From Octopus sinensis (Eukaryota): 21,511 bases of DNA. Numbering within the stretch: position 1 is the stretch's first letter; the number at the start of each line of letters is the position of its first letter. The notes beneath the pieces are model-generated. The model saw only the letters and a program-made list of their open reading frames with translations. It had not been told where the DNA came from and searched no databases. Shown piece by piece: positions 228-18,277 of this stretch. The DNA is taken from positions 1 to 21,511 of the forward strand of contig NW_021823795.1 of the NCBI RefSeq assembly GCF_006345805.1, in the 5' to 3' direction. A program made the position numbers and the translations under genes.

Positions 228-790
228 GGCGCTTGGCTTAGAGGGTCTTCGGCTTGCAATCGTAAGACCGTCAGTTCGATTCTTCGCAGCGCGTTGTGTC
301 CTTGATCAAGACAATTCATTTTCCACGTTGCTCCACTCAGCTGGCGAAAATGAGCAGTACCTATTTCTTTATCACCCACAAGGGGCTAAACACAGAGGGG
401 ACAAACAAGGACAGACATAGGTATTAAGTCGATTACATCGACCCCAGTGCGTAACTGGTATTTAATTTATCGACCCCGAAAGGATGAAAGGCAAAGTCGA
501 CCTCGGCGGAATTTGAACTCAGAACGTAAAGACAGACAAAATACCGCTAAGCATTTCACCCGGCATGCTAACGATTCTGCCAGCTCGCCGCCTTGAAAAT
601 GAGCAGTACCGGTAATTCAAAGGGGGCCAGCTTGTCACATTCTGCGTCACGCTGAATTTCCCTGGGAACTACGTTAAAGAGCACGCGTGTCTGCGGAGTA
701 CTCAGCCACTTGCACGTTAATTTCACAAACAGGCTGTTCCGTTGGTTGGGAACAACTGGAACCCTCGTCGTCGTAACCGACGGAGTACCA
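228..790 (+). mobile_element. Group A1 SINE (tRNA head + CORE-like segment + A tail), interrupted by a B1 SINE
   Basis: Degraded tRNA head with B box CAGTTCGATTC, followed by a CORE-like GTGTCCTTGATCAAGACA...AAAATGAG. The 3' part (~620-790, ending AACCCTCGTCGTCGTAACCGACGGAGT) is shared with the element at 15924-16316. Confidence 0.8.
362..594 (-). mobile_element. B1 SINE, full length, inserted in the A1 SINE
   Basis: Head AAGGCGGCGAGCTGGCAGAATCG, B box GAGTTCAAATTCC, tail ...GCCCCTTGTGGGTGATAAAGAAATA. Exact 16-bp TSD GAAAATGAGCAGTACC at 346-361 and 595-610. Confidence 0.95.
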
Positions 791-804
791 GAGATTAGTG
801 GTAT

Positions 805-970
805 TCTTTTCTATTCTAGGCACAAGGCCCGAAATTTTTGGGGAAGGGGCCAGTCGATTAGATCGACCCCAGTACGCAACTGGTACTTAATTCATCGACC
901 CCAAAAAGATGAAAGGTAAAGTCGACCTCGGGGGAATTTGAACTCAGAACGTAAAGACAGACAAAATACC
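805..970 (-). mobile_element. B2 SINE lacking the first ~50 nt of its head
   Basis: B core plus B2 tail (GGGCCTTGTGCCTAGAATAGAAAAGAA). It starts at GGTATTTTGTC directly after a B1 tail. Confidence 0.9.
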
Positions 971-1202
971 TATTTCTTTATTACCCACAAGGGACTAAAC
1001 ACAGAGGGGACAAAGAAGGACAGACATAGGTATTAAGTCAATTACATCGACCCCAGTGCGTAACTGGTACTTAATTTATCGACCCTGAAAGGATGAAAGG
1101 CAAAGTCGACCTCGGCGGAATTTGAACTCACAACGTAACGCAGACGAAATACCGCTAAGAATATCACCCGGCGTGCTAACGTTTCTGCCAGCTCACTACC
1201 TT
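971..1202 (-). mobile_element. B1 SINE, full length
   Basis: Near-identical to 362-594 over its whole length. Confidence 0.93.
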
Positions 1203-1207
1203 AAAAG

Positions 1208-1374
1208 TATTCATTTCTACTCTAGGAACAAAGCCCGAAATTTTGGGGGAGGAGGGCAGTCGATTAGATCGACACCAGTACGCAACTGGTACTTAATTCA
1301 TCGACCCCAAAAAGATGAAAGGTAAAGTTGACCTCGGCAGAATTTGAACTCAGAACGTAAAGACACGAAATACC
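1208..1374 (-). mobile_element. B2 SINE lacking the first ~50 nt of its head
   Basis: Closely matches 805-970 and is truncated at the same GGTATTTCG site. Confidence 0.9.
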
Positions 1375-1607
1375 TATTTCTTTACTACCCACAAGGGGCT
1401 AAACACAGAAAGGACAAACAAGGACAAACAAACGGATTAAGTCGATTATATCGACTCCAGTGCGTAACTGGTACTTATTGAATCGACAGCGAAAGGATGA
1501 AAGGTAAAGTCGCCCTCGGCGGAATTTGAACTCAGAACATAAAGACAGACGAAATACCGTTATGCGTTTCGCCCGGGGTGCAAACGTTTCTGCCAGGTCA
1601 CCACATT
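1375..1607 (-). mobile_element. B1 SINE, full length (second subfamily)
   Basis: B head, core and B1 tail. It carries the ACAAACGGATTAAG variant instead of ACATAGGTATTAAG. Confidence 0.9.
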
Positions 1608-2339: not shown

Positions 2340-2381
2340 CTATCTGCCTCCCTTTCTATCATCTATCTATCAATCTATCTT

Positions 2382-2452
<71 letters not shown>

Positions 2453-2457
2453 GTCTC

Positions 2458-2537
<80 letters not shown>

Positions 2538-2766
2538 ACCTATCTATCTATGTTATCTCTCTGCCTACCTATCTATCTATGTTATCTCTCTGCCTACCCA
2601 TACACAGATCCATCCATTTACGTACCCGTTCATCCATGTATATATGTATGTACGTACGTATGTATGTATGTATGTATGTATGTATGTATGTATGTATGTA
2701 TGTATGTATGTACGTACGTATGTATGTATGCATCTATCTATCTATCTATCTAAAAAAAAATCTATC

Positions 2767-2814
<48 letters not shown>

Positions 2815-2883
2815 ATCTATCTATCTGTCTGTCTATCTACCTACCTATATACCCATCTATCTCTGTCTGTCTGTCTCTCTCTA

Positions 2884-3407: not shown

Positions 3408-3855
3408 ACTCTACTCTTTTACTTGTTTCAGTCATTTGACTGCGGCCATGCTGGAGTACCGCCTTTAGTCGAGCAAATCGACCCCGGACTTAATCTTTGT
3501 AAGCCCAGATTACTTATTCTATCGGTCTCTTTTGCCGAACCGCTAAGTGAGGGGACATAAACACACCAGCATCGGTTGTCAAGCATGCTAGGGGACAAAC
3601 ACAGACCACAAATACAACACACACACCACACACACACACACATATATATTATATATATATATATATATATATTATATACATATATATATACGACGGGCTT
3701 CTTTTCAGTTTCCGTCTACCAAATCCACTCACAAGGCATTGGTCGGCTCGGGGCTATAGTAAAGAAGACACTTGCCAAGGTGCCACGCAGTGGAATTAAA
3801 CCTGGAACCATGTGGCTGGTTAGCAAGCTACTTACCACACAGCCACTCCTGCGCC
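3408..3855 (-). mobile_element. Group C SINE, full length, with internal (TA)n/(TG)n tract
   Basis: Head GGCGCAGGAGTGGCTGTGTGGTAAG, CORE-like ACCTTGG(G)CAAGTGTCTT, internal microsatellite ~3610-3690, tail ...GCAGTCAAATGACTGAAACAAGTAAAAGAG. Homologous to 11980-12380 and 15440-15853. Confidence 0.93.
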
Positions 3856-3980
3856 TATATATGTATATATATGCACAATATATGTATACACACACGCATA
3901 CATATATACATCTCTCTCTCTTCTCTGTGCCTATATATATCTATATATTATATATATATATTATATATATATTATATATA

Positions 3981-4686: not shown

Positions 4687-4741
<55 letters not shown>

Positions 4742-4805
4742 GTTTGTCTGTCTCTCTGTGTGTCTGTCTCTCTGTCTGTCTATCTATCTATCTATCTATC
4801 CATCA

Positions 4806-4883
<78 letters not shown>

Positions 4884-5049
4884 GTCTGTCTATACCCCTC
4901 ACACACGCATATGTGTGTGTGTGTGCGCGCGTATTATAACACACCTAGGCCCCGTGTTTTGTTACACATTTTCCCTCACGACCTACACATACACTTTCCT
5001 TTACTCCTTCATTCTCTCTCTCTCTTCGTCTATACCTATATATGTACAC

Positions 5050-5090
<41 letters not shown>
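4611..5090. repeat. Compound (CA)n/(CTAT)n/(CT)n microsatellites
   Basis: Directly visible. Confidence 0.93.
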
Positions 5091-5093
<3 letters not shown>

Positions 5094-6085
5094 GGTATCA
5101 TATCCACATGCATGTACTCTCATGATATTATGTTGGGCCAAGACTTACAGCTAAGGGGCCATTTTAGTAGCTTTGCTTGACAATCGAATTATCCCGCTGC
5201 CGTCGTCTTTATCAAACACCGTATCAAGATTCTCTCACCTTATTCACCTCCGTGATTCCAAGCTGCCGAAACGTCGTGATTTGGGTTGTGATGCCAGGTA
5301 CCACTAGCAGAACTTGGAGAATATTTAGTCAAATATATCAAACCCAGTACGTTTTTGGGATCTTTTCTCTTTGATTGCAAATTTTCAGCCTCTTCAATTC
5401 CTGATCGAATTGATTTCACATTCGGTATAATGATATGCTTTTATATGCTAATCATTGTTTTGAAATTCATTTTCGCAGTAAATCATTAAATAAAGTGTCA
5501 TTAGCTTTTAAAGTTTGAAAATTTTGGGTAATTTTAGCCAATCGTATGCCACAGACACATTTATGCATGTTTCCATAGTAACAAGGAAAGCATGAGAACT
5601 CTTTTGTCTGCGAGAATGTACTTGTTGACAAATATATTCGACTCGTTGAGATAAACATCAGATGTGTTAAAAATAACAGCCAAATAGGCTTTAAATCACG
5701 TGCCAAAAAAAATCTCTTGTTTTATTTTTGGATAACCATATAAATTCCCATGTGTAGAATACAAATTTGCAAATATTTTTCTGAAAATTCCAAGAAACAA
5801 AAAAAAAAAATTATGAGGGTTTATATGGCGTGCGTAAAGCAGAATTTCATTCATTTACTGTTGAGAACAGGAACTGTCACGCACAAATTGACAGCTTCCA
5901 ATCCTGATTTCTGATTGGGTGAAAATTATCAAACTTTAAACCTCTAAAACTTCTTTGAAAAATTTTCCTGAAAAAAGTGAAATATCTCCTGATATTCAGA
6001 TTGGAAAACTGTATTAATGTACCAAATTAAAAAAATATTCAATGAACTTTGAATTTTCAACGAAAACTCTCGCCACTTGTCAATA

Positions 6086-6617: not shown

Positions 6618-6789
6618 AACGATGGGTTTCTTCCAGTTTCCGTCTACCAAATCCACTCACAAGGCATTAGGTCGACTCGAGGCTAAAGTAAGTAGAATAT
6701 ATTTGCCCAAGGTGCCACGCAATGGGACTGAACCACCGAACCATGTGGTAGGGTTTCACGCTTCTTACCATCCAGCCACACCTGCGCCT
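6583..6789 (-). mobile_element. Group C SINE left half (tRNA + CORE-like), ending in (TA)n
   Basis: Matches the C head through ...GAAACTGGAAGAAACCCATCG, then runs into (TA)n. The right module is absent. Confidence 0.88.
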
Positions 6790-6830
6790 ATAATAGTAAT
6801 GTATTATCATTTAATGAAGCAATTTCATTT

Positions 6831-7618
6831 CGAGAAGCGCTACCCTTTCGGGATAAGCGCTGCAGGCATGGCTCGAGAAAAACGGGGCCGACCTGCCCGA
6901 GATGCGGTCAGAGCGACGAAACCGTTCTGCACGTACCCGAACAGTGTCCAACCATTTCCGTCCTGTGGGCCTATGTCGAACGACTGCTATCACGTGTGGG
7001 ATAAGTGAGTTTATCAACCAAGTCTATTGAGAATATTGTCGCGCCTCCTTCCTTGAAACGGGAAGGAAGGGCCATTTTCATCGTACTTGTGGCTTTGGCG
7101 AAAGAATGTGTATGGTAGACGCGTCTGAAAGGTCTAGAAGTAAACACTTTCCTCTCTGGTCAATCTCTCATCAACTTCTTCAAGTATCACTTGAAGAGGA
7201 AGGTGAGAGTAGAGAGGGAAGTTTTGTTTAGTGAATGCTTAAAAAAAAAAAGATGGGTGAATGTAGCAAGGATGGCTGTGTGAATGACGAAGCCAGCTTG
7301 AGCATAATCATACGAACCGAAAAACGAATGGAAAAAGAGAGTCACTTACAGTAATGTGTTTTTTGCATGACATTTTTGTCCGAGGTTACCGTGGTCTTTT
7401 CCGTAGGCTTTTCTTTCCACGGATAAACCTAATCTGTTTCCTCTTTTTACATTATGACATTTCTGTGATACACGATCCCTACTGATCGGCCTTTTTTTCC
7501 CACTATCACTTCTGATCGAATTTCTACCCCACTTTTTTTTCTTCTCTTTACAAAAGAAAAGCTCTACTTTGTATTTTGTCCCCACTGTGTTCAGCCCTGT
7601 GTGGCCAACAAAGAAGCA
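6831..7618 (+). mobile_element. Tx1-clade (L1 group) non-LTR retrotransposon 3' fragment: ORF2 C-terminus + 3' UTR
   Basis: Frame from 6831 reads REALPFRDK...PTCPRCGQSDETVLHVPEQCP..LWAYVERLL...AKECVW*TR...FFKYHLKRKVRVER...RWVNVARM. CX2CX8HX4C zinc knuckle at 6894-6947, typical of L1/Tx1 ORF2. In-frame stops at 7002 and 7116, end at 7281-7283. The T-rich UTR ends ...CCAACAAAGAAGCA. Confidence 0.88.

Positions 7619-7714
<96 letters not shown>
7619..7714. repeat. (TATC)24 perfect microsatellite
   Basis: 96 nt of uninterrupted TATC. Confidence 0.98.
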
Positions 7715-7715
7715 G

Positions 7716-7747
7716 GTGTTCAGCCCTGTGTCGCCAATAAAGAAACA
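7716..7747 (+). mobile_element. Second copy of the Tx1 3' terminus (32 bp)
   Basis: GTGTTCAGCCCTGTGTCGCCAATAAAGAAACA versus 7587-7618: 3 mismatches. Again followed by TATCT. Confidence 0.85.
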
Positions 7748-7820
7748 TATCTAAATGGATATCTACCTACCTATGAATCTAAATATCTCTCAACCAATCT
7801 ATCTAAATATCTATCTACAT

Positions 7821-8208
7821 AGCAATGGGCCGAGAGGAAGCTATCTCTAAAAAGGTCGGGCTGAACGTCCTGCCTTGTCCTGACCCTATCATCACGTAAC
7901 TGGAACGCATACTCTCCCGCTTTTGTGGAAGGGAAGAGTTCCAATGGTTAGGCGATCCATTTGCTGCCAACATCCGCTAAATGGAGGGCTGGGTATGCCG
8001 TGGCTGATGATGCGCAGACGCGCAGATACTGCGACACCTCCAGCGTGTCATTGACACCGGTGAAGAAGTGTGGTCGCCGTTTGTGAGACGCGCTTTCCCG
8101 CAGCTCGTCTCATTGACCGAACTTCAATCATGGATCAAGCAGAGACTGAGGCTGGGCGAATGGCACCGCGAGTGTCATCATGCTCTGGAGCAGCTCTGCC
8201 GGGATCAG
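7821..8208 (+). mobile_element. Tx1-clade ORF2 fragment (region after the RT domain), frameshifted
   Basis: WAERKLSLK..., LNVLPCPDP..LERILSRF / LWKGRVPMVRRSICCQHPLNGGLGMPWLMMRR / LRHLQRVIDTGEEVWSPFVRRAFPQL...GEWHREC. The GGLG motif and context are typical of L1/Tx1 ORF2. Two compensating frameshifts (~7922 and ~8028). Confidence 0.85.
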
Positions 8209-8711
8209 ACTTGTGCTACAGCTGTTTCGTAATGTCGTCGCTTTATGTTTGGCGTTGTAAAAGAGCCAAGTAATGAGCATTCCGTTATGTCATATATCAA
8301 ACTTGTTGGCTCCATAAAAATGAACTGGATTATGTACGTGAATTAATATCAAAAATTAAGACAAACTTTTAGAAATAACTACAGTCCTATAACGGAAACT
8401 GTAATAGGAGGACGATTTAAACAAGAAAAAACAAAAACTGAATACATATTTTCTAGGGAGACTCAGGACGTGGCTTTGGTGTGTTGGACAGTCACGTATC
8501 CGATATAATTTACAAAATATCATGAATATACCAAAAAAAAAAAAAAAAATGTCGTCCGATACGCGAATGCGTTTGTGATTGAATTTTTCTTGTCAGACGC
8601 CAAACTACACGTGTAACTTCGACTGGGGAACACAGCTTTAACTAATAATGGACGAGACAAAATAACATTCAGAGGCACTTGGGAACTAATAGACCAGACG
8701 TAATTTCTCTT

Positions 8712-8768
8712 GATATATATATATATATTATATATATATATATTATATATATATATATATATAATATA

Positions 8769-8800
<32 letters not shown>

Positions 8801-8945
8801 AGTGTGTATTTGTGTATGATTATATATATATGCATGTATGTATGTATATATATATATATATATAGACATATGCATGTATACACACAAACACATACACACA
8901 CGTACCCCCCCACACACATATATATATATATATCATGTATGTACA
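8712..8945. repeat. (TA)n/(TG)n microsatellite
   Basis: Directly visible. Confidence 0.95.
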
Positions 8946-9094: not shown

Positions 9095-9860
9095 GATAAT
9101 TTCTGCGACCACATCACCCCTAACATTTGGCCAGCTAACTCCCCAGACTGCAACCACCTTGATGATTATGTGTAGGGCGAAGTTGAACGGAAAACCGACA
9201 AAATTCCTTGTAACAACAATAATGAACTGCAGGCAAGGATTATGGCAGCATTGACCAACTTAAACAAGGAGACCGTCCGGAAGAGCCGCCGGAGATTCCG
9301 AAGTTTTCTGGAGGCCGTGGTTGAAGCCAATGGCAATTTTATTGAATATATTTACTCTTCAGTATTTCAAGATATGTTTATGTAATTTTGGTAAATAGTT
9401 AAGTTAAGTTAAGTTAATTTTTTGGCTCAAAAAGCAAAAAGCAAGGCCATGTAGGAGGACATGGAGTTATGTACAGGGTGGTGTTCATGCAAAGAGTTTA
9501 GGCCATTTCTGGTCAAGAGAGACTTTGAACTGAGCGGTCGTCGGCATCCATCTTCACTATCTCGTCCGGCAGCTTATTCCACGGATCCGCAACCCTGACG
9601 GAGAAAGCCCCCCTCCTTCGATTGAGATGAAATCGTCGCAGATAGAGCTTTTCGGAGTGACCCCGCAGCCGACGCTCTGGAGCAAGAGTGAAGAACAGCT
9701 CTTTCGAGGGGTTACACTTTCCGCTTATGATGTTGTGAGCAAGAATGAGATCACCACGGCGTCGTCGTTTTTCTAGAGAATAATATCGGTTAAAATGAGA
9801 TGTCAGTGTTATTTTCATTTTTGCGTAATTTCGACGGTAGTTTATTATTCACACCCCGTG
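9095..9860 (+). mobile_element. Tc1/mariner (DD37D/maT-like) transposon 3' part: transposase pseudogene + probable right end, split by a CR1 fragment
   Basis: 9095-9349 translates DNFCDHITPNIWPANSPDCNHLDDYV*GEVERKTDK...ELQARIMAA...RRFRSFLEAVVEANGNFIE. WPxNSPDxNxLD is the third catalytic Asp motif. The 3' non-coding part resumes at ~9783 and ends ...CACACCCCGTG. Confidence 0.85.
9398..9782 (-). mobile_element. CR1-clade LINE 3' fragment with (TTAAC)n tail
   Basis: YSLEKRRRRGDLILAHNIISG...RLRGHSEKL...FSVRVADPWNKLPDEIV is the classic CR1 ORF2 C-terminus. A short UTR and pentamer tail follow. Homologous to 17205-17594. Confidence 0.92.
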
Positions 9861-9861
9861 T

Positions 9862-10031
9862 GTGAGTGCGTATATACAACAAGCTTCTTTCAGTTTCCGT
9901 CTATCAAATCCTCTTGCAATTTCCCCGAGGCTATTGTTGAAGACACTGGCCCAAGGTGGCACGCAGTGGAACTAAACCCAGAACCATGTGGTTGGGAAGC
10001 AAGCTTCTTAACAGACAGCCACGCCTGCACC
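9862..10031 (-). mobile_element. Group C SINE left half, diverged
   Basis: Matches the C head and CORE-like part. It ends at TATATAC with no right module. Confidence 0.85.
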
Positions 10032-10191
10032 TGTATATGTATGTATGTAGGTATGTATGTATGTATGCATGTATGTATGTATGCATGAATGTATGTATGC
10101 ATGTATGTATGTATGTATGTATGTATGCATGTATGTATGTATGTATGTATGTAAGCATGCATGTATGTATGTATGTATGTAGGTATGTATG

Positions 10192-10222
<31 letters not shown>

Positions 10223-11160
10223 GCATGTATGTATGTATGTATGTATGTAAGCATGTATGTATGTATGTATGTATGTATGTAAGCATGTATGTATGTATGT
10301 ATGTATGTATGTAAGCATGTATGTATGTATGTATGTATGTAAGCATGCATGTATGTATGTATGTATGTATGTATTATGTATGTATGTATGTATGTATGTA
10401 AGCATGTATGTATGTATGTAGTATGTAAGCATGTAGTATGTATGTATGTATGTATGTATGTATAAGCATGTATGTATGTATGTATGTATGTATGTAAGCA
10501 TGTATGTATGTATGTATGTATGTAAGCATGCATGTATGTATGTATGTATGTATGTATGTATGTATGTATGTATGTATGTATGTATGTATGTATGTTTGTA
10601 TGTATGTACGTATATAAGCATGTATGTATGTAAGTATTTATGTATGTATGTATGTATGTATGTATGCATGCATGTATGTATGTATGTATGTATGTAAGCA
10701 TGTATGTATGTATGTATGTATGTATGTTTGTATGTATGTACGTATATAAGCATGTATGTATGTAAGTATTTATGTATGTATGTATGTATGTATGTATGTA
10801 TGTATGCATGTATGTATGTATGTATGTATGTATGTATGCATGCACGTATGTATGCATGTATGTATGCATGCATGTATGTATGTATGTATGTATGTATGTA
10901 TGCATGCATGTATGTATGCATGCATGTATGTATGTATGTATGTATGTATGTATTATGCATGTATGTATGCATGTATGTATGTATGTACATATGTATGTAT
11001 GCATGCATGTATGTATGTATGTACATATGTATGTATGCATGCATGTATGTATGCATGCATGTATGTATGTTTGTATGTATGTACGTATGTATGCATGTAT
11101 GTATGCATGTATGTATGTACATATGTATGTATGCATGTATGTATGTATGTATGTATGTAT
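10032..11160. repeat. ~1.13-kb (TATG)n array with CATG/TAAG variant units
   Basis: Directly visible. Source of the 447-aa and 401-aa HTYI pseudo-ORFs. Confidence 0.98.
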
Positions 11161-12405: not shown

Positions 12406-12627
12406 GAGGCGGCGAGCTGTCGGAAACGTTAGCACGTTGGGTGAAATGCTTAGCAGTGTTTCGAGCGGTGTTTTGTCTGTTCTGAGTTCAAATTCTGCCG
12501 AGGTCGACTTTGCTTTCATCGTGTCGGGGTCGAAAAATAAAGTAGCAGTCGTGTACTGGGGTCGGTCTAATCGAATGGCCCCCTACCCCCAAAATTTCAG
12601 GCCTTCTGCCTAGTGTAGAAAAGAATA
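12406..12627 (+). mobile_element. B2 SINE, full length
   Basis: GAGGCGGCGAGCTG head, GAGTTCAAATTC B box, B core, tail CCCCAAAATTTCAGGCCTTCTGCCTAGTGTAGAAAAGAATA. Confidence 0.92.
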
Positions 12628-12667
12628 CACACACACACGCTCACACACACGCACGCACACACACACA

Positions 12668-13214: not shown

Positions 13215-13450
13215 AAGGCGACGAGCTGGCAGAGACGTTAGCACGCCGGGCGAAATGCGTAGACGTATTTCGTCTGCCGTTACGTTCTGAGTTCAAATTC
13301 CGCCGAGGTTGACTTTCATCCTTTCATCCTTTCGGGGTCGATAAATTAAGTACCAGTTACGCACTGGGGGTCGATGTAATCGACTTGATCCGTTTGTCTG
13401 TCCTTGTTTGTCCCCTCTATGTTTAGCCCCTTGTGGGTAGTAAAGAAATA
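13215..13450 (+). mobile_element. B1 SINE, full length
   Basis: Full head, core and B1 tail ending AAAGAAATA. Confidence 0.94.
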
Positions 13451-13655
13451 AGAAGTGTTAGCACGCCGACCAAAACGCATAGCGTCATTTCGTCCGTCTT
13501 AGCGTTCTAAGTTTAAATGCCACAGAGGTGGACTTTGCCCTTCCTCCCCTTTCGAGATCGATGAAATAAGTAGCAGATGTGTACTGGGTTTCAATGTAAT
13601 CTACTTACCCCCTCCTCCGAAATTACTGGCCTTGTGCCAAAATTTGAAACCAATA
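13451..13655 (+). mobile_element. Old B3 SINE lacking the first ~14 nt of its head
   Basis: Begins AGAAGTGTTAGCACG (head position ~15). Diverged B core, tail GGCCTTGTGCCAAAATTTGAAACCAATA. Confidence 0.85.
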
Positions 13656-13884: not shown

Positions 13885-14117
13885 AAGGCGGTGAGATGGC
13901 AGAATCGTTAGCACGCCGGGCGAAATACTTAGCGGTATTTCCTCTATCTTTACGTTCTGATTTCAAATTCCGCCGAGGTCGACTTTGCCTTTCATCCTTT
14001 CGGGGTCGATAATTTAAGTACCAGTTACGCACTGGGGTCGATGTAATCGAATTAATCCCTTTGTCTGTCCTTGTTTGTCCTCTCTATGTTTAGCCCCTTG
14101 TGGGTAATAAAAAAATA
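13885..14117 (+). mobile_element. B1 SINE, full length
   Basis: Full head, core and B1 tail. Confidence 0.94.
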
Positions 14118-14320
14118 AGAGGCGTTGCAGTGCCGGGCAAAATGCTTAATAGCATTTCGTCCGTCTTCACGTTCTAAGTTCAAATTCCACCCAGGGCAAC
14201 TTTGCCTTTCATCCATTTCGGGGTCGATAAAACAAGCACTTGTTAAGGACTGGAGTCGAGGCGATCGACTTACCCCAACCCCGAATCTTGCTGGCCTTGT
14301 GCCAAAATTTGAAACCAATA
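14118..14320 (+). mobile_element. Old B3 SINE lacking the first ~14 nt of its head
   Basis: Begins AGAGGCGTTGCAGTGCCGGG. Same B3 tail as 13451-13655. Confidence 0.85.
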
Positions 14321-14859: not shown

Positions 14860-15337
14860 CTAGCAGTATCGCCCGGCGTTGCTTGGGTTTGTTTTGACCC
14901 TTTAGAATTGGAATTTTTGAAAAGTAAAAATGTTGCATTATGTAGCTTGTTATTCTCTTTAAGTGAACATTTTTCTGGTTAAAATACACCGAAAAATGGC
15001 GACACAGCAGTCAAAAAATCGTAAAAAATGGGGATATGTTGCATAATGTAGCTTGTTATTCTCTTTAAGTAACATTTTTCTGGTTGAAATACACCGAAAA
15101 ATGGCGACACAGCAGTCAAAAAATCGTAAAAAAATAGGGATTTTCATAGAAAAAAGCATCTTTTTGATGTAAATAATTTTTGGTGTTAACATGGTCCGAT
15201 TTGAAGGAAGAGCAAGCCTTCTTCTATCATACTTTCAATTTTGGTCAACTTGCGCCGCAGGGTCTCGGAGGAGATAGTGTTAGTTGAAGGCTACAAAACC
15301 TGCCACACACAGACAACTTTAGCTTTATATATAGAGA
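14860..15337 (-). mobile_element. Non-autonomous Helitron, complete, with internal ~106-bp tandem duplication
   Basis: On the minus strand it reads 5' A|TC (15337-15336) ... GC-rich hairpin-like CCCAAGCAACGCCGGGCG ... CTAG|T (14863-14860), i.e. canonical termini in an A|T site with no TSD. Tandem units at 14930-15035 and 15036-15141. Confidence 0.85.
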
Positions 15338-17204: not shown

Positions 17205-17594
17205 GTTAGTTAAGTTAAGTTAGTTAGTTAAGTTAAGTTAATTATTTGGCTCAAAAAGCAAAAAGCAAGGCCGTATAGGGGGACATGGAGTTATGTACAG
17301 GGTGGTGCTCATGCAAAGAGTTCAGGCCATTTGTGGTCAAGGGAGACTTTGAACCGAGCGGTCGTCGGCATATTCACTATCTCGTCCGGCAGCTTATTCC
17401 ACGGATCCGCAACCCGGACGGAGAAAGCCCCTCTCCTTCGATTGAGATGAAATCGTAGCAGATAGAGCTTTTCGGAGTGACCCCGCAGCTGACGCTCTGG
17501 AACAGGAGTGAAGAACAGCTCTTTCGAGAGGTTACACTTTCCGCTTATGATGTGAGCAAGAATGAGATCACCACGGCGTCGTCGTTTATCCAAG
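17205..17594 (-). mobile_element. CR1-clade LINE 3' fragment with (TTAAC/CTAA)n tail
   Basis: LDKRRRRGDLILAH...FSVRVADPWNKLPDEIVNMPTTARFKVSLDHKWPELFA*. Second copy of 9398-9782. Confidence 0.92.
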
Positions 17595-17861: not shown

Positions 17862-18093
17862 AAGGCTACGAGCTGGCAGAAACGTTAGCACGCCGGGCGA
17901 AATGCTGAGCGGTATTTTGTCTGCCGCTACGTTCTGAGTTCAAATTCCGCCGAGGTCGACTTTGCCTTTCATTCTTTCGGGGTCGATAAATTAAGTACCA
18001 GTTACGCACTGGGGTCGATATAATCGACTTAATCCATTTGTCTGTCCTTGTTTGTCCTCTCTGTGTTAGCCCCTTGTGGGTAGTAAAGAAATA
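17862..18093 (+). mobile_element. B1 SINE, full length
   Basis: Full head, core and B1 tail. 13-bp TSD GGTCTTTGTTCAA at 17851-17863 and 18278-18290 flanks this copy plus the next. Confidence 0.94.
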
Positions 18094-18277
18094 GGAATTT
18101 CGTCTGCCGTTACGTTCTGAGTTCAAATTCCACCGATGTCGACTTTGCCTTTCATCCTTTCGGGGTCGATTAAATAGGTACCAGTTACGCACTGGGGTCG
18201 CTGTAATCGACTTAATCCGTTTGTCTGTCCTTGTTTGTCCCCTCTGTGTTTAGCCCCTTGTGGATAGTAAAGAAATA
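18094..18277 (+). mobile_element. B1 SINE lacking the first ~50 nt of its head
   Basis: Begins GGAATTTCGTCTG, the same site as 970 and 1374, and ends AAAGAAATA. Confidence 0.92.

What the first reader, a model, noticed from the sequence alone, without database searches (positions are those of the whole stretch)
7575..7747. B1 SINE tail matches the 3' end of the Tx1-clade LINE: candidate SINE-Tx1 partnership
Seen: the Tx1 remnant ends TTTGTCCCCACTGTGTTCAGCCCTGTGTGGCCAA(C/T)AAAGAA(G/A)CA. All seven B1 copies end close to TTTGTCCCCTCTGTGTTTAGCCCCTTGTGGGTA(A/G)TAAAGAAATA. By hand this aligns ungapped at about 36-37 of 44 positions, and both termini stop at the same point. Established: stringent SINEs borrow the 3' end of the LINE whose reverse transcriptase mobilises them, mostly documented for L2, CR1 and RTE clades. 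Inference: B1 is a tRNA SINE mobilised by this or a sister Tx1 family. That pairing is rarely described, and it would explain the target bias below because many Tx1 families are sequence-specific.
Basis: partly seen in the sequence, partly recalled or inferred. Interest (0 to 1): 0.85.

Follow-up and report, generated by a model that had tools for sequence, protein, structure and literature searches.

The report
Octopus SINEs share a LINE tail
A short mobile element that litters this octopus-type genome ends in the same roughly 45-base tail as a long L1/Tx1-type mobile element, so it very probably borrows that element's copying enzyme; this is a new example of a well-known kind of parasitism.

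Summary
Window 7575-7618 matches the last 44 nt of the 'B1' SINE consensus at 34/44 ungapped (37/44 if any variant counts). Both elements end there, and the local alignment score is about 11 sd above shuffles.

The refuting scenario fails. Bases 7575-7618 are the true 3' end of a LINE: an ORF2 C-terminus (6828-7283, zf-RVT), a 3'UTR (7284-7574), the tail, then (TATC)24. Five further copies of related LINEs, from Octopus sinensis, Argonauta hians and a metagenome contig, carry ORF2 or 3'UTR followed by the same tail. Two are closer to B1 (40/47 and 43/54).

The tail holds a 4-bp hairpin with a conserved CUUGU loop. Its stem shows compensatory changes among LINE, B1 and two other SINE tail types. 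In A. hians, SINE copies with at least two distinct body types carry the tail.

The LINE belongs to the L1 superfamily: full-length relatives have APE, RT and zf-RVT, and the best solved relative is human L1 ORF2p. 'Tx1 clade' is inferred from published mollusc phylogenies, not tested here. The tRNA origin of B1 is not confirmed by the tools. The 'Tx1 target specificity' explanation of SINE-into-SINE junctions is not supported; single target-site duplications around composites point to template switching.

This is a new member of a known kind, of moderate interest.

The parts
6828..7283 (+). 5'-truncated LINE ORF2 C-terminus, decayed, with two in-frame stops. It carries the CX2CX8HX4C zinc knuckle.
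   Evidence: Translation. Pfam zf-RVT at E=7.5e-4, below the gathering cut-off. phmmer gave 188 relatives, the best being P0001 at 66% identity, E=1.5e-52. tblastn with P0001 residues 202-349.
7284..7574 (+). LINE 3'UTR.
   Evidence: Aligns with the 3'UTR that follows the ORF2 stop of P0155 on the independent contig L009, up to the first bases of the tail.
7575..7618 (+). LINE 3' tail shared with the B1 SINE (44 nt).
   Evidence: Homologous tails end the LINE copies in L002, L003, L004 (two copies) and L007.
7594..7606 (+). Position of the conserved small hairpin. In this decayed copy it reads GCCC-UGUGU-GGCC and pair 2 is broken. Intact LINE copies read GGCC-CUUGU-GGCU.
   Evidence: the count of structure pairs on A2. 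RNAalifold on A5.
7619..7714 (+). (TATC)24, most likely the LINE's own terminal repeat.
   Evidence: TRF reports 100% matches. Related copies end in (ATT)n (L003, L007) or in ...AAATCTAT (A. hians). A pre-existing microsatellite target cannot be excluded.
7716..7747 (+). Second, extremely 5'-truncated copy of the same tail (32 nt), followed by a decayed (ATCT)n at 7748-7821.
7828..8229 (+). Second fragment of the same LINE family, covering ORF2 between the RT and the zinc knuckle. It lies head-to-tail downstream of the first copy.
   Evidence: tblastn with P0001 residues 10-138 and P0004 residues 5-110.
362..597 (-). B1 SINE copy A, full length, with a 16-bp target-site duplication GGTACTGCTCATTTTC.
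971..1200 (-). B1 SINE copy B, followed by a 5'-truncated SINE with the T2b tail (801-970).
1375..1600 (-). B1 SINE copy C, followed by a 5'-truncated SINE with the T2b tail (1207-1374).
13217..13450 (+). B1 SINE copy D, followed by a 5'-truncated SINE with the T2a tail (to 13655).
13886..14117 (+). B1 SINE copy E, followed by a 5'-truncated SINE with the T2a tail (to 14320).
17866..18093 (+). B1 SINE copy F, the first unit of a dimer.
18096..18277 (+). B1 SINE copy G, the second, headless unit of the dimer. The dimer is flanked by the 13-bp target-site duplication GGTCTTTGTTCAA.
13601..13655 (+). T2a SINE tail (...CTGGCCTTGTGCCAAAATTTGAAACCAATA). It has the same hairpin position and loop, with stem UGGC/GCCA. 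A second copy lies at 14291-14320.
801..856 (-). T2b SINE tail (...CGGGCCTTGTGCCTAGAATAGAAAAGAATAC). It has the same hairpin with stem GGGC/GCCU. Further copies lie at 1207-1250(-) and 12580-12628(+).

Best explanation
Window 6828-7618 is the 3' part of a non-LTR retrotransposon of the L1 superfamily, most probably the Tx1 clade. This lineage is widespread in octopods. Its transcript ends in a conserved tail of about 45 nt: a U/C-rich stretch, a 4-bp hairpin with loop CUUGU, then AAUAAAGAAAU and, in LINE copies, a short tandem repeat.

The B1 SINE carries a copy of that tail at its own 3' end. So do at least two other SINE tail types in the window and SINE copies with at least two body types in Argonauta.

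The inferred mechanism is the standard stringent one. The LINE's ORF2 protein recognises the tail hairpin on the SINE RNA in trans. It nicks the target and reverse-transcribes the SINE from its exact 3' end by target-primed reverse transcription, leaving target-site duplications of 13-16 bp and no poly(A).

Shown: the tail homology, the coincident termini, the constant attachment of the tail to the LINE, co-occurrence in the same genomes, and hairpin covariation.
Inferred: protein-RNA recognition, trans-mobilisation, the direction of borrowing (LINE to SINE), and the Tx1 clade assignment.
For: Tail homology
- 34/44 ungapped. The local score of 25 compares with 9.9 +/- 1.4 in shuffles.

The tail belongs to the LINE
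- L002 (O. sinensis CM016876.1): ORF2 stop at 4837, tail at 5027-5071.
- L003 (A. hians): tail at 5147-5192, then (ATT)n.
- L004 (A. hians): a second subfamily with its tail at 5255-5285, plus a further 3'UTR+tail copy at 5425-5651.
- L007 (JGI contig): ORF2 stop at 1746, tail at about 1975-2019, then a long (ATT)n.
- L009 shares the window's own 3'UTR up to the start of the tail.
- These rest.

B1 matches sister LINE tails better
- 40/47 with L002 and 43/54 with L003. Each alignment ends at both termini.

The tail is conserved where the rest of the 3'UTR is not
- The window LINE gives no UTR hit to L002 or L003 by blastn, yet the tails align.

Hairpin
- 86.7% of cells are paired against 65% in shuffles (0/500 reach it), and 20-52% when partners are slid.
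- There are 10 double-sided changes: B1 GCCC/GGGU, LINE GGCC/GGCU, T2a UGGC/GCCA, T2b GGGC/GCCU.
- RNAalifold predicts the same helix independently on 19 tails.

Retroposition hallmarks
- Target-site duplications of 16 and 13 bp, and no poly(A).

SINE copies in A. hians
- At least 8 copies, with at least two body types, end in GGCCCTTGTGGCTAATAGAGAAATC-like tails next to LINE copies with the same tail.

LINE type
- Full-length distant relatives have APE + RVT_1 + zf-RVT.
- The best solved relative is human L1 ORF2p at E=2e-73, against R2 at 3e-25.
- Published RT phylogenies name Tx1 among the LINE clades of molluscs, O. sinensis included (PMC10294476). The O. vulgaris annotation lists L1-Tx1 as the only L1-type class among recently active LINEs (PMC13282606).
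Against: - No intact, same-genome LINE copy with a tail at least 90% identical to B1 was recovered. The window copy is decayed and only 77-80% identical, and the best match is in another species.
- The hairpin is tiny: RNAalifold gives -3.3 kcal/mol and single-sequence z-scores are about 0. Its covariation rests on roughly three or four independent tail lineages, so related sequences inflate the counts.
- B1 lacks the terminal tandem repeat seen on the LINE copies.
- The Tx1 assignment was not tested against Tx1 reference sequences.
- No functional data exist.
- Repbase, Dfam and SINEBase could not be searched. A better-matching LINE of another clade cannot be excluded genome-wide.
Confidence: 0.75

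Rival explanations
1. The 44 nt at 7575-7618 is a separately inserted, extremely 5'-truncated SINE (or SINE-tail) fragment that merely abuts an unrelated LINE 3'UTR. The LINE itself has no such tail.
For: A 32-nt tail-only fragment does occur on its own at 7716-7747, so such short pieces exist. The independent contig L009 breaks off inside the tail, so it cannot show the whole tail on the window's own subfamily.
Against: Five other LINE copies, from two named species plus a metagenome contig, have ORF2 or 3'UTR running straight into a homologous tail. 3'UTR homology continues up to the tail. The variant at 7575 (GTTCAGCCCTGTGTGGCCAA) differs from every SINE tail in the window. L009's 3'UTR continues into the first roughly 15 nt of the tail.
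Confidence: 0.03
2. The tail is shared, but B1 is actually mobilised by a different LINE. Either another clade has acquired the same tail, or B1 uses a relaxed-type enzyme that needs no tail. In that case the homology is historical rather than functional.
For: The window's LINE copy matches B1 at only 77-80%. Octopus genomes hold very abundant RTE, CR1 and Dong-R4 LINEs (PMC13282606, PMC8967140). Tails can be exchanged between elements by template switching. L1-superfamily enzymes are often relaxed (PMC3472496).
Against: The only other LINE family in the window, at 9513-9818(-) and 17309-17593(-), ends in (TTAAC)n and shows no similarity to the B1 tail. B1 has no poly(A) and ends precisely at the LINE terminus. 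Several unrelated SINE bodies keep the same tail across Octopus and Argonauta, with compensatory stem changes, which argues for ongoing selection on the tail.
Confidence: 0.12
3. The direction is reversed. The LINE lineage captured its 3' end from a pre-existing SINE, or both took it from a third element.
For: Sequence similarity alone has no direction. The composite SINEs flanked by single target-site duplications show that template switching between these RNAs is frequent.
Against: The tail is present in LINE subfamilies that have diverged to about 48-70% protein identity, in two octopod genera. SINE bodies carrying it are heterogeneous. The simplest history is therefore an old LINE tail sampled repeatedly by SINEs. 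Either direction leaves the functional partnership intact.
Confidence: 0.08
4. The similarity is chance resemblance between two U/C-rich, A-rich low-complexity ends.
For: The downstream half (AAUAAAGAAAU) is compositionally simple.
Against: The alignment score is about 11 sd above shuffles, and none of 2000 shuffles reached it. The match recurs in independent genomes and always at element termini.
Confidence: 0.01

Closest known systems
Stringent-type SINE/LINE pairs sharing a 3' tail, e.g. eel UnaSINE1/UnaL2 and zebrafish ZfL2 (Ohshima et al. 1996; Kajikawa & Okada 2002; Hayashi et al. 2014, PMC4176376)
   Same: The SINE's 3' end is homologous to the LINE's 3' end and stops at the same terminus. 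A small stem-loop lies near the end. There is no poly(A). Several SINE families use one LINE tail.
   Different: The partner here is an L1-superfamily (probably Tx1) LINE, not L2, CR1 or RTE. The hairpin has only 4 bp. The SINE lacks the terminal tandem repeat that the LINE copies carry. No assay has been done.
Stringent L1-clade pairs in plants and algae: maize ZmSINE2/3 with LINE1-1_ZM, and Chlamydomonas SINEX-3_CR with L1-1_CR (Ohshima 2012, PMC3472496)
   Same: An L1-superfamily LINE with a conserved, structured 3' end shared with SINEs, which implies specific rather than poly(A)-based template recognition.
   Different: Those elements end in poly(A) and are in green plants. This one is in an animal, has no poly(A), and belongs to a different L1-superfamily branch.
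SINEU mobilised by Tx1-Mar in crocodilians (Kojima 2015, PMC4494074)
   Same: A SINE proposed to depend on a Tx1-clade LINE.
   Different: The SINEU link rests on shared target preference and shared snRNA-derived heads. SINEU ends in poly(A) and no tail homology is reported. Here the link is a shared 3' tail, and no shared specific target was demonstrated.
Octopus and cephalopod SINEs: OK/OR1/OR2 (Ohshima & Okada 1994) and Ceph-SINEs with RTE-derived parts (Akasaki 2010; Kojima 2018, PMC5786205)
   Same: Abundant SINEs in cephalopods with a modular head/body/tail build.
   Different: I could not compare sequences with OK/OR or Repbase entries. Ceph-SINE tails are RTE-related, not L1/Tx1-related. 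Kojima 2018 mentions neither octopus nor Tx1.

Membership tests
Stringent SINE/LINE partnership (shared 3' tail) | The SINE 3' end is homologous to the LINE 3' end and both stop at the same terminus. | tested here: met
   34/44 with the window LINE, 40/47 with L002 and 43/54 with L003, all reaching both termini. Termini are fixed by target-site duplications and by the start of the terminal repeat.
Stringent SINE/LINE partnership (shared 3' tail) | The tail is an integral, constant part of the LINE (ORF2 - 3'UTR - tail) in independent copies. | tested here: met
   L002, L003, L004 (two copies) and L007 carry it. L009 supports UTR contiguity.
Stringent SINE/LINE partnership (shared 3' tail) | SINE and LINE co-occur in the same genome. 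| tested here: met
   Both are in the window. In A. hians loci L003 and L004, LINE copies and at least 8 tail-bearing SINE copies lie within 8 kb.
Stringent SINE/LINE partnership (shared 3' tail) | A conserved RNA stem-loop in the tail, supported by covariation. | tested here: inconclusive
   A 4-bp helix with 86.7% of cells paired against 65% in shuffles (0/500), and 10 double-sided changes. RNAalifold predicts the same helix. It is very weak thermodynamically and rests on few independent lineages.
Stringent SINE/LINE partnership (shared 3' tail) | Tail-dependent trans-mobilisation by the LINE protein. | not testable with these tools
   This needs a retrotransposition assay.
L1 superfamily of non-LTR retrotransposons | APE endonuclease + RT + C-terminal Cys/His motif, with the RT closest to L1-type enzymes. 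| tested here: met
   Distant full-length relatives P0139 and P0127 have Exo_endo_phos + RVT_1 + zf-RVT. P0139 hits human L1 ORF2p at 2e-73 and R2 at 3e-25. Close relatives P0152 and P0161 have RVT_1 + zf-RVT. No copy of this family with the endonuclease region was recovered, because the contigs are cut.
Tx1 clade | The RT domain groups with Tx1 references (Xenopus Tx1L, Keno, Kibi, Koshi) in a phylogeny or RTclass1. | not testable with these tools
   No Tx1 reference sequence or named hit could be obtained. The support is indirect: published mollusc and octopus LINE classifications name Tx1 or L1-Tx1 as the L1-type class (PMC10294476, PMC13282606, PMC8967140).
Tx1 clade | Sequence-specific insertion (typical of many, not all, Tx1 families). 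| tested here: inconclusive
   LINE copies lie head-to-tail next to earlier copies or tails, in the window at 6828-8229 and in L004 at 5013-5651. They sit beside short tandem repeats that are equally well the element's own 3' repeats. Other (TCTA)n arrays in the window carry no LINE tail.
tRNA-derived SINE | The head is recognisably derived from a tRNA, with A and B boxes. | tested here: not met
   ARAGORN finds no tRNA. The Rfam scan at E<=0.1 gives no tRNA hit on any copy. By eye there is a B-box-like GAGTTCAAATTCC and a possible GGCGG/CCGCC acceptor pairing, so tRNA origin remains plausible but unproven.
SINE (generic) | Short, non-coding, multi-copy, flanked by target-site duplications. 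| tested here: met
   About 231 nt. Seven copies lie 5.6-9.7% from their consensus. Target-site duplications are 16 and 13 bp.
SINEU / Tx1-Mar system | snRNA-derived head, poly(A) tail, and a specific DNA-transposon target shared with the LINE. | tested here: not met
   No snRNA hit, no poly(A), and no common transposon target seen.

The most novel reading that the evidence does not exclude
One stringent-type Tx1-clade LINE lineage may be the engine behind much of the octopod-specific SINE expansion. It would recognise a conserved 3' hairpin (loop CUUGU) followed by AAUAAAGAAAU. Several SINE families with unrelated heads and bodies, in Octopus and Argonauta, would have acquired this tail. That would make it the first tail-sharing (stringent) SINE/Tx1 partnership described in animals.
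Probability: 0.45. Interest if true: 0.7.

Novelty: new member of a known kind. Interest (0 to 1): 0.5.

Why it matters
SINEs are among the largest repeat classes in octopus genomes: about 11.6% of the O. vulgaris genome (PMC13282606) and about 40% of its transposable-element content (PMC8967140). Their expansion is treated as an octopus-specific hallmark. Yet none of the papers I could search names the LINE that moves them.

A shared tail identifies a concrete candidate enzyme and a concrete RNA element, a 4-bp hairpin with loop CUUGU. That makes the question testable in a retrotransposition assay.

It would also add an animal example of sequence-specific template recognition inside the L1 superfamily, where the mammalian paradigm is poly(A)-based 'relaxed' recognition. 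If the Tx1 assignment holds, it adds a new partner clade to the list of tail-sharing SINE/LINE pairs. In practice it improves the classification of the hundreds of 'unclassified SINE' families in octopus annotations.

Tried and rejected
- Word-indexed protein search with the decayed window ORF2 remnant found nothing. The exhaustive phmmer search was needed.
- Both metagenome scans found nothing: the exact LINE tail pattern, and a protein-alignment scan in which 114 pattern hits were all unconfirmed by tblastn.
- Contigs L001, L005 and L009 end before or inside the tail and could not be used for it. P0153 was not on record.
- Clade naming through source names failed. Hits to P0152 and cluster members carry no Tx1 or L1 names. 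The PDB holds no Tx1 protein; entry 2v0r 'LTX' appeared only as a weak endonuclease-domain hit.
- Single-sequence folding of tails gives no significant stability, with z between -0.1 and +0.8 except for L004. A longer outer stem (UCUGUGUU/AGUAAAGA), seen by eye, was not predicted by RNAalifold and is not claimed.
- The Rfam E-value scan returned only microsatellite-driven sub-threshold miRNA and snoRNA matches, and no tRNA.
- I checked whether other long (TCTA)n arrays in the window (2355-2862, 4687-4883) begin with LINE tail fragments. They do not. Microsatellite targeting by the LINE is therefore neither shown nor excluded.
- Literature searches for an existing description of an octopus SINE/LINE partner or of SINE/Tx1 tail sharing found none in the searchable library. 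The 'TX1' in PMC4176376 is a mutant name. The supplement of PMC13282606 holds no repeat library.
Full report
**What the window is.** It is AT-rich and microsatellite-dense, packed with short interspersed repeats and LINE remnants. The closest protein relatives of its LINE come from Octopus sinensis and Argonauta hians, so the source is an octopod-type genome.

**The observation.**
- The B1 tail pattern occurs six times at 3 mismatches or fewer, plus once at the LINE end. None is expected by chance.
- The seventh B1 copy (17866-18093) has a 1-nt deletion in the tail.
- A MAFFT consensus of the seven copies is 231 nt, and the copies lie 5.6-9.7% from it.
- Ungapped identity of 7575-7618 to the consensus tail is 34/44. 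It is 37/44 only if any variant on either side counts.
- A local alignment of the whole 3'UTR (7284-7625) against the whole SINE consensus picks exactly this terminal block: 33/41, score 25. In 2000 shuffles the mean was 9.9, sd 1.4, maximum 19.
- B1 copy A is bounded by a perfect 16-bp target-site duplication (GGTACTGCTCATTTTC). That fixes its 3' end at ...AAAGAAATA without poly(A).
- The LINE ends at ...AAAGAAGCA, directly before (TATC)24.
The identity was slightly overstated.

**Is 7575-7618 really the end of a LINE?**
- Upstream, frame 3 from 6825 encodes a decayed ORF2 C-terminus with two stops. It carries a CX2CX8HX4C knuckle and a weak Pfam zf-RVT match.
- An exhaustive phmmer search gave 188 relatives, the best at 66% identity (P0001).
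- The window holds two pieces of this LINE: 6828-7277 (P0001 residues 202-349) and, downstream of the tail, 7828-8229 (residues 10-138). These are two head-to-tail, 5'-truncated copies.
- I then fetched DNA around relatives.
  - O. sinensis (L002): the ORF2 stop at 4837 is followed by about 190 nt of UTR and TATTGTCCCCCTCTATGTTTGGGCCCTTGTGGCTAATAAAGAAAT.
  - A. hians (L003): the stop is followed by about 180 nt of UTR and TATCGTCCCCTCTATGTTTTTGCCCTTGTGGCTAATAAAAGAAATA, then (ATT)n.
  - A second A. hians subfamily (L004) ends CTGTGTCAGCCAGGTGGCTAAGAAAGAAAT.
  - A further UTR-only copy in L004 (5425-5651) ends TCTGTGTCGGCCCTTGTGGCTAATAAAGAAATC.
  - A JGI contig (L007) ends ...GGGCCCTTGTGGCCAATAAAAGAAATC, then a long (ATT)n.
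- UTR homology runs continuously into the tail in L003, L007 and L008.
- The window's own UTR aligns with that of L009, whose protein P0155 is the closest to the window copy. The alignment runs up to the first bases of the tail, where the contig ends.

**Relation of B1 to these tails.** B1 matches the L002 tail at 40/47 and the L003 tail at 43/54. Both alignments run to the termini of both elements. 'A sister family' of the window copy is therefore the better donor. Between LINE subfamilies the rest of the 3'UTR is not alignable, but the tail is. That is what selection on the tail would produce.

**Structure.**
- All tails contain a 4-bp stem and a 5-nt loop: B1 GCCC-CUUGU-GGGU and LINE GGCC-CUUGU-GGCU/GGCC.
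- Two other SINE tail types in the window have the same loop with different stems: T2a UGGC-CUUGU-GCCA and T2b GGGC-CUUGU-GCCU.
- On 15 distinct sequences, 86.7% of cells pair against 65% in shuffles (0/500 reach it) and 20-52% in slid controls. There are 10 double-sided changes.
- RNAalifold on 19 LINE and SINE tails, including Argonauta, predicts the same helix.
- The helix is thermodynamically weak and the covariation rests on few independent lineages. I rate it as suggestive.

**Breadth.** The two A. hians loci hold at least eight SINE copies with at least two distinct body types. One has the B1-like ...AAGTACCAGT... core. Another is built around a GGTTCAATCCTGA motif. All end in GGCCCTTGTGGCTAATAGAGAAATC-like tails beside LINE copies with that tail. 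The partnership therefore looks old and shared across Octopoda.

**What kind of LINE.**
- Close relatives with more sequence (P0152, P0161) have RVT_1 + zf-RVT. Distant full-length relatives (P0139, P0127) have APE + RVT_1 + zf-RVT.
- P0139's best solved relative is human L1 ORF2p over residues 5-858 (2e-73), far ahead of R2 proteins (3e-25). L1-superfamily membership is met.
- Tx1 versus L1 proper could not be tested, because no named Tx1 sequence was reachable.
- An RT-phylogeny study of mollusc LINEs that included O. sinensis names Tx1 among its clades (PMC10294476). Octopus annotations list L1-Tx1 (PMC13282606, PMC8967140). Tx1 is therefore a reasonable inference, at about 70-75%.

**Mechanism.** The best-supported reading is the standard stringent model. 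ORF2p of this LINE binds the tail hairpin of SINE RNA in trans and starts target-primed reverse transcription at the exact 3' end. Target-site duplications of 13-16 bp and the absence of poly(A) fit that model. Recognition and mobilisation are inferred, not shown.

**The 'target bias'.**
- B1 copies B, C, D and E are each followed by a 5'-truncated second SINE, and F and G form a dimer.
- The composites are flanked by single target-site duplications:
  - F+G: GGTCTTTGTTCAA
  - D+T2a: AATCCATTKTAA
  - the four-part array at 801-1600: ACCACTAATC.
- No target-SINE head lies upstream of the B1 units. They are therefore not insertions into SINE targets.
- They look like single events in which the enzyme switched from one SINE RNA to the 3' end of a B1 RNA, or like dimeric master copies.
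- The junction ...AAATA|GGTATTTCG recurs, and both clean target-site duplications start with GGT. That hints at GGT microhomology in priming or switching. This is an inference and was not tested.
- If the composites do arise by template switching, B1 and T2 RNAs are used by one enzyme.

**Prior knowledge.**
- Tail sharing is textbook for L2, CR1 and RTE.
- Stringent L1-clade pairs are known in maize and Chlamydomonas (PMC3472496).
- A SINE-Tx1 link was proposed for crocodilian SINEU, by target and head with poly(A) tails and no tail homology reported (PMC4494074).
- A Repbase-wide SINE/LINE comparison mentions neither Tx1 nor octopus (PMC5786205).
- I found no description of an octopus SINE partner in the searchable library.
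- Repbase, Dfam and SINEBase were not available, so prior curation cannot be excluded.

**Verdict.** This is a real feature with a standard mechanism: a new member of a known kind. Interest is moderate because it names a candidate driver for the octopod SINE expansion and makes that directly testable.

Noticed in passing
window 801-1600 (-), 13217-13655 (+), 13886-14320 (+), 17866-18277 (+): B1 units are joined at their 3' end to a 5'-truncated second SINE (T2a, T2b or B1), and each composite is flanked by a single target-site duplication. The junction ...AAATA|GG(T/A)ATTTCG recurs three times. This suggests template switching between SINE RNAs, or dimeric masters, rather than target-specific insertion.
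   Followed up: partly
window 6828-8229; L004 5013-5651; L006 1-8169: LINE copies of this group tend to lie head-to-tail. In the window a copy is followed by a tail fragment and then a second copy. L004 has two 3' ends 370 bp apart. In L006 the same 401-aa and 395-aa ORFs recur on both sides of the RT gene. This may reflect a preference for inserting next to existing tails or repeats.
   Followed up: partly
L004 5330-5651: A SINE-type head (GAGCTGAACTGAAGGTCGTTGGTTCAATCTGAATC...) lies about 45 nt upstream of a LINE fragment that starts within 3 nt of the ORF2 stop codon and runs through the whole 3'UTR and tail. It could be a chance juxtaposition, or a head + full 3'UTR chimera of the kind from which SINEs arise.
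   Followed up: no
window 9513-9818 (-) and 17309-17593 (-): Two remnants of a different LINE family, with the C-terminal motif ...RRRGDLI...RGH..KL...FS.RV...WN.LP. Their 3'UTRs end in (TTAAC)n-type repeats, at about 9395-9425 and 17205-17244. They show no similarity to the B1 tail.
   Followed up: partly
window 6622-6800, about 9850-10030 (-), about 3700-3860: A further short repeat family (GGGTTTCTTCCAGTTTCCGTCTACCAAATCCACTCACAAGGC...CCAAGGTGCCACGCA.TGGGACTGAACC...), seen as recurring pseudo-ORFs. One copy lies directly upstream of the 5'-truncated LINE.
   Followed up: no
protein P0153: An octopod LINE ORF2 fragment, 69% identical to P0001, is deposited in NCBI as 'MAG: zinc-binding domain-containing protein [Herbaspirillum sp.]'. 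This is probably host DNA contaminating a bacterial metagenome bin. P0001, P0151 and P0152 likewise come from JGI metagenome samples.
   Followed up: no
window 10036-11160, 2355-2862, 4687-4883, 8713-8900 and others: There are very long tetranucleotide and dinucleotide arrays: (TATG)282, (TCTA)127 and (TCTA)49. They produce dozens of sub-threshold Rfam miRNA 'hits' (mir-297, mir-3149, mir-466), which are artefacts of simple sequence.
   Followed up: yes
window 14930-15141: A tandem duplication of a 105-bp unit (2.0 copies, 95% identical). Its nature is unknown.
   Followed up: no
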